Assembly: GCA_965644265.1 (NCBI GenBank)
Contig: OZ286459.1
Span: forward strand, 117,242,001 to 117,306,000
Length of the DNA stretch: 64,000 nt
Direction: 5' to 3'
Source: Glycera tridactyla
Lineage: Eukaryota
The position numbers and the translations under genes are program-made. Below the pieces are notes generated by a model that was not told where the DNA came from, did no database searches, and saw only the letters and a list, made by a program, of their open reading frames with translations. Each line of letters starts with the position of its first letter. Positions within the stretch are counted from its first letter, which is position 1. Positions 22,978 through 23,724 of this stretch are shown here, in pieces.

Positions 22978-23724
22978 CTAATACAAAGGCTTTTTGAAGC
23001 CACGAACAATCCTGCCTAAATTAGGCACGCTGGAGAGAAGAGCTTGTCGGATTTCCAAACCAAACCTTTTACTATACTTAGAATTTTCACGTGGAGTGAT
23101 ACCATCATCGCTCCAATCCGTCACGCTCGATGGAGCTTCGTCTATAAGAGAGCCAAAACCGCGTGTCGAATGGCAAATGTATGCTAACTCCCCGTCGCAC
23201 AGTGTCTCCAATCGAGCATTGAACAAGCGGGCCCTTTCACGAAAGTTGTCGGGCCCCTCAGCACGGTCTACGCAAGTCATGAAAACCACCACTTTAACTC
23301 CATGTTCTTTGCGGAAACATCTCCCCAGGTCAAAAAGGTCATCCGCTACATGTCGAGGCTGAAATTCCTCTCTACACAAATCATTGCTGCCCAGACACAC
23401 CACTACAACATCCGGGGCTAAAGCCGAAAGTGCTAAGGTTTCATCTTCAATGCCTGAATTTCCGCCATAAACTTCACAAAATTCCACAAATCTGAAGTTA
23501 ACCACATCAAACACGTGGTCAACCTTCATGAGCTTAGCATTAGCAGCACCGCGTGATTTCTTTCCAACTTGTATATCAGGCCACCAACCTTCTTGAACAG
23601 TGTTATCCAAAAGAAAATCATCCTGCATTTTTGTAAATGCGTGACCTAAAATAAGAGCTTTGGGATTGCGTCCCATCCATTGCGCAACTGGGATATACGC
23701 AAATTTAGGTTTCCAGTGCGCCAT
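22978..23724 (-). CDS. SGNH/GDSL-hydrolase-fold protein (probable pseudo-enzyme), 248 aa, upstream of gag
   Basis: Block I ILGHAF (Ser replaced by Ala), block III VVVCLGSNDL, and block V WSDDGITP (His replaced by Thr). ATG has A at -3 and G at +4. Confidence 0.8.
   Translation of the reverse strand: MAHWKPKFAYIPVAQWMGRNPKALILGHAFTKMQDDFLLDNTVQEGWWPDIQVGKKSRGAANAKLMKVDHVFDVVNFRFVEFCEVYGGNSGIEDETLALSALAPDVVVVCLGSNDLCREEFQPRHVADDLFDLGRCFRKEHGVKVVVFMTCVDRAEGPDNFRERARLFNARLETLCDGELAYICHSTRGFGSLIDEAPSSVTDWSDDGITPRENSKYSKRFGLEIRQALLSSVPNLGRIVRGFKKPLY

What the first reader, a model, noticed from the sequence alone, without database searches (positions are those of the whole stretch)
22978..23724. 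Catalytically dead SGNH-hydrolase ORF placed 5' of gag in a Ngaro element
Seen: an intact 248-aa ORF with SGNH blocks. The nucleophile Ser is Ala (GHAF) and the block V His is Thr (DGITP instead of DGxH), while the block III GxND is kept. Established: some Ngaro elements carry an SGNH/esterase ORF, which I recall lying downstream of YR, and the esterase-like ORF1 domain of ZfL2-type LINEs binds lipids without hydrolysing them. Inference: this is a maintained pseudo-enzyme in a new first-ORF position, possibly targeting RNPs to membranes. Two catalytic losses in an otherwise open frame suggest selection for a non-enzymatic role.
Basis: partly seen in the sequence, partly recalled or inferred. 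Interest (0 to 1): 0.78.

Follow-up and report, generated by a model that had tools for sequence, protein, structure and literature searches.

The report
Inactive esterase-like gene leading a retrotransposon
A young jumping gene of the Ngaro type starts with a lipase-like (SGNH) gene that has lost its two key catalytic residues but kept everything else, and a related element with the same kind of loss shows strong selection on it, so it is probably a working non-enzyme protein and not debris.

Summary
On the minus strand, 23724..22978 is an intact 248-aa ORF. It has a confident SGNH fold (pLDDT 89.8; Z 16-17 to GDSL lipases and PAF-AH Ib).

About 75 relatives read GHS[FM] / GSND / DGxHP. This ORF reads GHAF / GSND / DGITP. 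It keeps 26 of 29 family-conserved positions; the misses are the nucleophile Ser, the base His and a mild Tyr->Phe.

These changes need at least 3 nucleotide substitutions, while the element's terminal repeats differ at 2 of 1141 bases. The loss therefore predates this insertion.

No other copy of this family could be obtained, so selection on it is untested. A nearby lineage with both residues lost (L003 vs L032) shows pN 0.18 against pS 0.76. A second clade with both lost also keeps open frames. Catalysis was lost 2-3 times.

The first-ORF position is not special to this copy. L001, L032, L035/L036 and 14 metagenome loci read SGNH-gag-RT, with YR where the contig reaches, most with active-looking sites. 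Earlier follow-ups of this scan reported the same layout on other DNA of this genome.

The ZfL2 premise is imprecise, because that esterase is active. The acidic core (pI 5.1) argues against charge-driven membrane binding.

Verdict: a new variant of a known kind, of moderate interest.

The parts
23764..24074 (-). A1 terminal repeat (311 nt), 99.4% identical to A2. A TATA-like ATAAATAG lies at 23815..23808, near its 3' end.
   Evidence: blastn self-comparison; sequence read
22978..23724 (-). Leading ORF: 248-aa SGNH-fold protein lacking the nucleophile Ser and the base His. Its ATG has A at -3 and G at +4.
23635..23646 (-). Block I reads GHAF (family GHS[FMY]). Ala29 codon GCA lies at 23640..23638, in place of the nucleophile Ser.
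23380..23391 (-). Block III reads GSND, so the oxyanion Asn114 is kept.
23092..23106 (-). Block V reads DGITP (family DGxHP). Asp207 is kept. Thr210 codon ACT lies at 23097..23095, in place of the catalytic His.
20927..22876 (-). gag-like ORF (first ATG at 22876; the ORF listing starts it at a TTG at 22891). It has no Pfam hit and is 41% identical over its conserved core to the ORF that follows the SGNH gene in L001.
19639..21150 (-). RT/RNase H ORF (RVT_1, E 6.5e-10). The frame is broken in a run of eight T at about 19645..19652.
19377..19652 (-). C-terminal RNase H part (FFFCDNAAVV...), in a different frame from the RT ORF. It is contiguous with RT in relatives P0086 and P0087.
18499..19470 (-). 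Tyrosine recombinase ORF (323 aa) with LRVSE, HSFR and RSYV motifs. Phage_int_SAM_1 scores E 1e-4.
17613..18442 (-). B1 repeat (830 nt), 100% identical to B2.
17306..17616 (-). A2 repeat (311 nt).
16419..17248 (-). B2 repeat (830 nt), the 3' end of the element. A 57-nt spacer separates it from A2.

Best explanation
The ORF encodes a real SGNH-fold protein, the leading gene of a young Ngaro-type tyrosine-recombinase retrotransposon (A1 - SGNH - gag - RT/RH - YR - B1 A2 B2). In this lineage the nucleophile Ser is Ala and the general-base His is Thr, so it should not hydrolyse esters.

Shown: the fold, the two substitutions, the retention of all other family-conserved positions, and that the loss predates this insertion.

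Inferred: the protein is kept by selection as a non-catalytic binding or scaffolding component of the element's life cycle. It would use the preserved SGNH scaffold and pocket (Asn114 and Asp207 are kept) to hold a ligand or partner without turnover. The acidic core makes a protein partner or an ester ligand more likely than bulk electrostatic binding to anionic membranes or RNA.
For: Fold: pLDDT 89.8; all top PDB matches are SGNH, Z 16-17.

Substitutions: Ser and His are essentially invariant in about 70 relatives, and the window ORF has Ala and Thr.

Specificity of the loss: of 29 columns conserved in at least 70% of 58 active-looking relatives, the query keeps 26. The misses are S29A, H210T and Y221F. 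Active-looking members keep 24.7 on average, range 18-29. The query's terminal branch (0.9-1.05) is no longer than those of active-looking sisters P0004 (1.0) and P0001 or P0002 plus their stem.

Age of the loss: it needs at least 3 nucleotide changes (GCA against TCN; ACT against CAY). A1/A2 differ at 2 of 311 bases and B1/B2 at 0 of 830.

Inactivity: the equivalent ZfL2-1 mutants S143A and H282S abolish hydrolysis but still bind liposomes (PMC3905857).

Selection on ORFs that have lost both residues: L003 (P0003) and L032 ORF1 both read GHEW / NGFTP. They are 73% identical in protein and 68.5% in DNA, with pN 0.180 against pS 0.763 (Fisher 6e-52) and LWL85 dN 0.21, dS 1.65. This is tighter than their gag N-terminus, pN 0.38. 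L032 is a complete four-ORF element. A second, starred clade in which all members lack both residues (P0036, P0008, P0022) keeps open frames while dS is saturated.
Against: No second copy of this family was obtainable: no exact-protein record, no sequencing run listed, and the closest RT is 51% identical. Conservation of Ala and Thr across copies, and dN/dS for this family, are therefore untested.

The query does not clearly group with the constrained lineage that has lost both residues. The best tree puts it weakly (67/52) with active-looking P0001 and P0002. A clade of query, P0003 and L032 is not rejected (p-AU 0.32) but not shown, so the selection evidence is by analogy.

This copy's RT/RH frame is broken, so the copy itself may be inert. 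There is no RNA or protein evidence, and the non-catalytic function is not identified.
Confidence: 0.6

Rival explanations
1. The loss is recent and the ORF is dispensable. On this view it is open only because the lineage is young, and any need for hydrolysis is met in trans by co-resident Ngaro families that keep an active SGNH gene. It would then be a decaying accessory gene and not a maintained pseudo-enzyme.
For: Earlier notes of this scan report several Ngaro elements with an intact leading SGNH gene in the same genome. Trans-supply of lost retrotransposon domains is an accepted idea (PMC3905857 discussion). ZfL2-1 ORF1p is dispensable in HeLa assays. No family copies were available to show constraint. 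This copy has a broken RH frame.
Against: Whole-ORF neutrality long enough to give 3 changes in 6 catalytic-codon bases should have eroded the other conserved positions, yet 26 of 29 are kept, no fewer than in active-looking relatives. His to Thr needs two steps in one codon, which implies time spent in the inactive state. The nearest lineage that has lost both residues is under strong purifying selection, which is not expected for a dispensable ORF.
Confidence: 0.25
2. The protein targets the element's RNP to negatively charged membranes by surface charge, as shown for the ZfL2-1 ORF1p esterase.
For: ZfL2-1 active-site mutants still bind liposomes, so membrane binding does not need catalysis. 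The family profile matches the ZfL2-1 esterase chain 4c1b only weakly (E 0.17).
Against: ZfL2-1 binding is attributed to protein surface charge acting on anionic lipids. The query's SGNH core has pI 5.07 and net charge -8.8. All five members that have lost both residues have core pI below 7, against a family median of 9.3 (not corrected for phylogeny). No coiled coil or other ORF1p-like module is fused to it.
Confidence: 0.12
3. It is still an enzyme that uses another nucleophile or base, or the Ala and Thr are assembly or sequencing errors.
For: Asp207 and Asn114 remain. Thr31 follows Ala29, but active-looking P0001 and P0002 have the same Thr.
Against: Three nucleotide differences in two codons are not a typical assembly error. 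S143A or H282S alone abolishes activity in the ZfL2-1 esterase. Coupled loss of Ser and His recurs in four other relatives plus L032.
Confidence: 0.03

Closest known systems
Ngaro-like YR retrotransposons with an SGNH hydrolase ORF (for example Xenopus DIRS-53_XT and DIRS-54_XT; Goodwin and Poulter 2004 as cited in PMC9210276)
   Same: Both have split direct repeats A1 ... B1 A2 B2, gag-like, RT/RH and YR ORFs, and an extra SGNH-domain ORF of unproven function.
   Different: In those elements the hydrolase ORF is described after YR. Here, and in every relative recovered with enough flanking DNA, it is the first ORF before gag. Here the catalytic Ser and His are also replaced.
ZfL2-1 (CR1/L2-type LINE) ORF1p esterase domain, PDB 4c1b (PMC3905857)
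   Same: Both are retrotransposon-encoded SGNH folds placed upstream of the polymerase. S-to-A and H-to-S mutants there are inactive yet still bind liposomes, which shows that a non-catalytic role is physically possible.
   Different: ZfL2-1 is an active, low-turnover esterase fused to a coiled coil, with strongly conserved active-site residues and charge-driven binding to anionic lipids. The window protein is a stand-alone ORF, is naturally Ala/Thr, and is acidic. The sequence relation is only marginal (profile E 0.17).
GDSL derivatives of Athena-L Penelope-like elements in bdelloid rotifers (PMC5408684)
   Same: Both are retroelement-borne GDSL/SGNH-derived ORFs that lack catalytic residues.
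   Different: They belong to a different retroelement class, sit at a different position (ORF3 or multi-ORF Terminons), and group with PC-esterases. No selection analysis of the forms that lack catalytic residues is reported in the passages read.
PAF acetylhydrolase Ib alpha subunits (1wab, 1bwp), with the inactive insect PAF-AH homologues and Oskar cited in PMC3905857
   Same: PAF-AH Ib alpha is among the best structural matches (Z 16.4). The inactive insect PAF-AH homologues and Oskar (cited in PMC3905857) are precedents for SGNH folds kept after losing hydrolytic activity.
   Different: These are host proteins with 12-14% identity to the query. No evidence here points to LIS1-like or RNA-binding partners.

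Membership tests
SGNH/GDSL hydrolase superfamily | Three-layer alpha/beta/alpha SGNH fold | tested here: met
   AF2 pLDDT 89.8. Foldseek top 50 are all SGNH. VIA Z 16-17 over about 178 residues. Pfam PF13472 scores above its gathering cut-off.
SGNH/GDSL hydrolase superfamily | Block I nucleophile Ser (GDS / family GHS) | tested here: not met
   The ORF reads GHAF. Ser is present in 58 of 58 active-looking relatives. Homology holds, but active-enzyme status does not.
SGNH/GDSL hydrolase superfamily | Block II oxyanion Gly | tested here: inconclusive
   The region (residues 80-91, YGGNSG) is variable in the family, and model confidence drops there (block mean 70).
SGNH/GDSL hydrolase superfamily | Block III GxND with oxyanion Asn | tested here: met
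   GSND, with Asn114 kept.
SGNH/GDSL hydrolase superfamily | Block V DxxH (catalytic Asp and His) | tested here: not met
   The ORF reads DGITP. Asp207 is kept and His is replaced by Thr210.
Ngaro-type YR retrotransposon | Split direct repeats A1 [ORFs] B1 A2 B2 | tested here: met
   A1/A2 are 311 nt at 99.4% identity; B1/B2 are 830 nt at 100%.
Ngaro-type YR retrotransposon | RT/RNase H ORF | tested here: met
   RVT_1 E 6.5e-10; 48-51% identity to relatives. In this copy the RH part is in another frame, after a break in a T-run.
Ngaro-type YR retrotransposon | Tyrosine recombinase ORF | tested here: met
   323-aa ORF with Phage_int_SAM_1 E 1e-4 and LRVSE, HSFR and RSYV motifs. It is 28-30% identical to the ORFs after RT in related loci.
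Ngaro-type YR retrotransposon | Hydrolase ORF located after YR, as in the described vertebrate families | tested here: not met
   The SGNH ORF is first, before gag. The same order is seen in L001, L032, L035/L036 and 14 metagenome loci.
Esterase-type LINE ORF1p (ZfL2-1 class) | SGNH esterase fused to a coiled coil in ORF1p, with conserved active site and transposon-specific H191/S228 | tested here: not met
   This is a stand-alone ORF with the active site lost. The profile hit to 4c1b is only E 0.17. The H191/S228 equivalents were not examined.

The most novel reading that the evidence does not exclude
Hydrolysis may be dispensable for the role of retrotransposon-borne SGNH proteins. In this marine-invertebrate Ngaro clade the leading SGNH gene lost its Ser and His two or three separate times. 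In at least one such lineage it is under strong purifying selection. All five proteins that lost both residues are acidic. This would mean the protein has shifted to a new binding role, for example as an adaptor for gag or a host factor, and is not a membrane-active esterase. The window ORF would be the youngest, least eroded case.
Probability: 0.35. Interest if true: 0.7.

Novelty: new variant of a known kind. Interest (0 to 1): 0.52.

Why it matters
Why several unrelated retroelement classes carry an SGNH esterase is an open question. The only biochemical study read here (ZfL2-1) could not say whether hydrolysis matters for propagation. Natural lineages that replaced both catalytic residues yet keep the protein under strong constraint are a ready-made experiment. 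They suggest that the scaffold, and not the chemistry, can be the selected property. They also give matched pairs with and without the catalytic residues (P0001 or P0002 against this ORF, P0003 and L032) for biochemical comparison. For annotation, these ORFs tend to fall at or below Pfam thresholds and would otherwise be missed or called decayed.

Tried and rejected
- The word-indexed protein search with the ORF gave no hits. With a 10-sequence profile it returned only two proteins already known.
- Exact-protein look-ups of both ORF forms found nothing on record.
- No sequencing run was listed. Read laying was therefore not used, and neither copy variation nor expression could be examined.
- The closest RT in the collection is 51% identical, so no same-family copy could be reached.
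- dN/dS of the query against P0001, P0002 and P0003, and within the P0008/P0022/P0036 clade, could not be computed because dS is saturated.
- The metagenome scan used patterns that required LGH[SA]. Its proportion of active-looking ORFs is therefore biased, and I used it only for gene order.
- phmmer of the single sequence against PDB found nothing; the profile search did.
- Findings search by sequence and by words for 'dead' or 'pseudoenzyme' was blank.
- I considered a shared origin of the loss with P0003 and L032, prompted by the common His-to-Thr. The tree neither supports nor rejects it.
- Goodwin and Poulter 2004 and Poulter and Butler 2015 were not read directly. Repbase and Dfam could not be surveyed.

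Full report
**1. What is there**

The feature lies on the minus strand. The ORF listing gives an ORF at 23796..22978 (GTG start).

A self-comparison of 15-27 kb shows the full Ngaro anatomy:
- A1 at 24074..23764 (311 nt).
- An internal region carrying four ORFs.
- B1 at 18442..17613 (830 nt).
- A2 at 17616..17306.
- A 57-nt spacer.
- B2 at 17248..16419.

A1 and A2 differ at 2 of 311 positions. B1 and B2 are identical.

The ORFs, in element orientation, are:
- SGNH-like, 23724..22978.
- gag-like, 22891/22876..20927, with no Pfam hit.
- RT/RH, 21150..19639, with RVT_1 at E 6.5e-10.
- YR, 19470..18499, with Phage_int_SAM_1 at E 1e-4 and LRVSE, HSFR and RSYV motifs.

No other copy or fragment is in the window.

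**2. Is it an SGNH protein?**

Yes.
- Pfam Lipase_GDSL_2 scores 34.7 bits against a cut-off of 32.9, but covers only residues 89-209.
- An exhaustive phmmer over 1.84 billion representatives gives 83 hits. The best are P0001 (E 3e-44, 37% identity) and P0002.
- The language-model atlas places it among eukaryotic, mostly molluscan, GDSL clusters.
- An AlphaFold2 model built on 19 sequences has pLDDT 89.8 and pTM 0.87.
- Every one of the top Foldseek matches in PDB is an SGNH hydrolase: PAF-AH Ib alpha, sialate O-acetylesterases and Bacteroides GDSL lipases.
- VIA-align gives Z 16-17 with about 178 residues at 2.7-3.8 A.

**3. Are the catalytic residues gone?**

Yes.

In an alignment of 76 relatives, block I reads GHS[FMY], block III G[ST]ND and block V DGxHP. 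The family has His where the classical GDS has Asp. The window ORF reads GHAF, GSND and DGITP.

A profile of the family aligns GHS with the GNS nucleophile motif of solved GDSL proteins. It aligns blocks III and V with their GTNDIA and DGVHP.

The codons are GCA (Ala29) and ACT (Thr210). P0001 has TCC and CAT. At least three nucleotide changes are therefore needed, two of them within the His codon.

In the ZfL2-1 esterase, S143A or H282S alone abolishes hydrolysis (PMC3905857). Loss of hydrolytic activity here is thus a well-grounded inference.

**4. Decay or specific loss?**

I took the 29 alignment columns conserved in at least 70% of 58 active-looking relatives.
- The query keeps 26. It misses only S29A, H210T and the conservative Y221F.
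- Active-looking members keep 24.7 on average, with a range of 18-29. P0001 and P0002 keep 26.
- The query's terminal branch (0.9-1.05 substitutions per site) is like that of active-looking P0004 (1.0).

Ngaro repeats are expected to be near-identical at insertion (PMC6681497). Here they differ by 2 of 1141 bases, so well under one substitution is expected in the 747-nt ORF since insertion.

The three changes therefore arose in the active lineage that produced this copy. A master element carrying Ala and Thr was able to transpose.

Whole-ORF neutral drift long enough to change 3 of 6 catalytic-codon bases would not leave the other conserved positions untouched.

**5. Relatives that have also lost both residues**

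Both residues are also lost in:
- P0003 (GHEW / NGFTP).
- P0008 (GGMA / DGISP, block III GEDL).
- P0022 (GGQS / NGVVP, GEDL).
- P0036 (GHES / NGKVP).

P0036, P0008 and P0022 form a starred clade. The query sits in a starred clade with P0001, P0002, P0003 and P0004.

Following the second-closest RT (P0087, 48% identity) led to L032. This is a 5.3-kb contig with four intact ORFs in the order ORF1-gag-RT-YR. Its ORF1 is an SGNH ORF with both residues lost (GHEW / RANEL / LNGFTP), 73% identical to P0003.

For L003 against L032:
- DNA identity is 68.5%.
- pS is 0.763 (153 of 200 synonymous sites) against pN 0.180 (119 of 664), Fisher 6e-52.
- LWL85 gives dN 0.21 and dS 1.65. ML gives dN 0.18 and dS 4.95.
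- Omega is therefore at most about 0.13.
- The gag N-terminus of the same pair is less constrained, with pN 0.38 and pS 0.67.

This shows that SGNH ORFs lacking both catalytic residues are kept by strong purifying selection in this Ngaro group.

With L032 added, the best tree puts the query weakly (67/52) with P0001 and P0002. A clade of query, P0003 and L032 is not rejected (p-AU 0.32). The loss thus arose two or three times. The selection evidence bears on the query by analogy, not directly.

**6. Position of the ORF**

- L001 (P0001, active-looking) has SGNH followed by a gag homologue, E 2e-28.
- L032 and L035/L036 have ORF1-gag-RT-YR.
- Fourteen longer metagenome loci have SGNH-gag-RT in that order, followed by YR in the nine whose sequence reaches it (L008, L011, L012, L013, L015, L016, L017, L020, L026). 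The other five are L021, L022, L025, L027 and L029.
- Earlier follow-ups of this scan reached the same conclusion for other pieces of this genome.

The 5' position is therefore a clade-wide layout, independent of catalytic state.

The papers I could search describe the hydrolase only after YR, in amphibian Ngaro (PMC9210276). None describes the 5' layout. Repbase could not be checked.

**7. Mechanism**

The ZfL2-1 esterase is active, though slow. It binds anionic phospholipids and liposomes, and active-site mutants keep liposome binding, which is attributed to surface charge. That paper also notes strong conservation of active-site residues in LINE esterases. It cites inactive SGNH precedents (insect PAF-AH homologues and Oskar) and the trans-supply idea. 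Catalytic residues are also absent in Athena-L GDSL derivatives (PMC5408684).

Here the SGNH core has pI 5.07 and net charge -8.8. All five relatives that have lost both residues have core pI 4.8-6.7, against a family median of 9.3 (Mann-Whitney p 0.001, not corrected for phylogeny). This argues against charge-driven binding to anionic membranes or RNA.

I favour a ligand-holding or partner-binding role that uses the preserved pocket (Asn114 and Asp207 kept). That step is inference.

**8. Caveats**

- No other copy of this family, and no reads, were available.
- The RT/RH frame of this copy is interrupted in a run of eight T near 19645..19652. The rest of RNase H lies in another frame down to 19377. 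This may be a real defect or a homopolymer assembly error.
- No RNA evidence exists for expression.

**Verdict**

This is a new variant of a known kind: a naturally inactivated, apparently maintained SGNH accessory protein in Ngaro elements, with independent parallels in related lineages.

Noticed in passing
window 19377-19660 (minus strand): The RT/RNase H reading frame of this copy breaks within a run of eight T at about 19645..19652. The RNase H C-terminal part (FFFCDNAAVV...) continues in another frame to 19377, whereas relatives P0086 and P0087 read straight through. This is either a real defect of the copy or a homopolymer assembly error.
   Followed up: partly
window 22874-23815 (minus strand): A TATA-like ATAAATAG lies at 23815..23808, near the end of A1. 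A donor-like GAG|GTGATT follows (GT at 23762..23761), just past the A1 boundary. Acceptor-like pyrimidine-rich ...TGTGTATAG (AG at 23940-minus-1000, that is 22940..22939) and ...TTTGTAG (AG at 22914..22913) lie ahead of the gag ATG at 22876. The SGNH ORF could therefore lie in a leader intron of a gag mRNA, as earlier notes suggest. These are consensus-level matches only, with no RNA data.
   Followed up: partly
L032:40-963, L003:222-1091, L004:1171-1884, L030:164-892, L031:468-1214: Related Ngaro-type leading ORFs from two public metagenome-labelled assemblies also lack both the Ser and the His. They fall in two separate lineages. The older clade (P0008, P0022) has also lost the block III Asn (GEDL) and the block I His, which looks like stepwise erosion of the active site on a conserved scaffold.
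   Followed up: yes
window 22978-23010 (C-terminus of the ORF) against P0001-P0004 and L032 ORF1: The closest relatives carry a 30-40-residue C-terminal extension with a poly-proline stretch (PPPPPPP). The window protein lacks it and ends ...RGFKKPLY.
   Followed up: no
SGNH cores of query, P0003, P0008, P0022, P0036: All members that have lost both residues have acidic to neutral cores (pI 4.8-6.7), while the family median is 9.3. Some active-looking relatives in the same clade are acidic too (P0001, P0002, P0038, P0073), so the charge shift may precede the loss of catalysis.
   Followed up: partly
window 16835-16868, 16961-16992, 18029-18062, 18155-18186: Palindromic 32-34-nt units (AGCTAATTGGTTAACCCTTTGACCAATTAGCT) occur twice in each B repeat.
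   Followed up: no
window 26487-26826: A tandem array with a 57-nt period (about 5 copies, 95% identity in the centre) lies inside a 124-aa plus-strand ORF that repeats HDDWWGMNYHVLSWFSW. It is outside the element.
   Followed up: no
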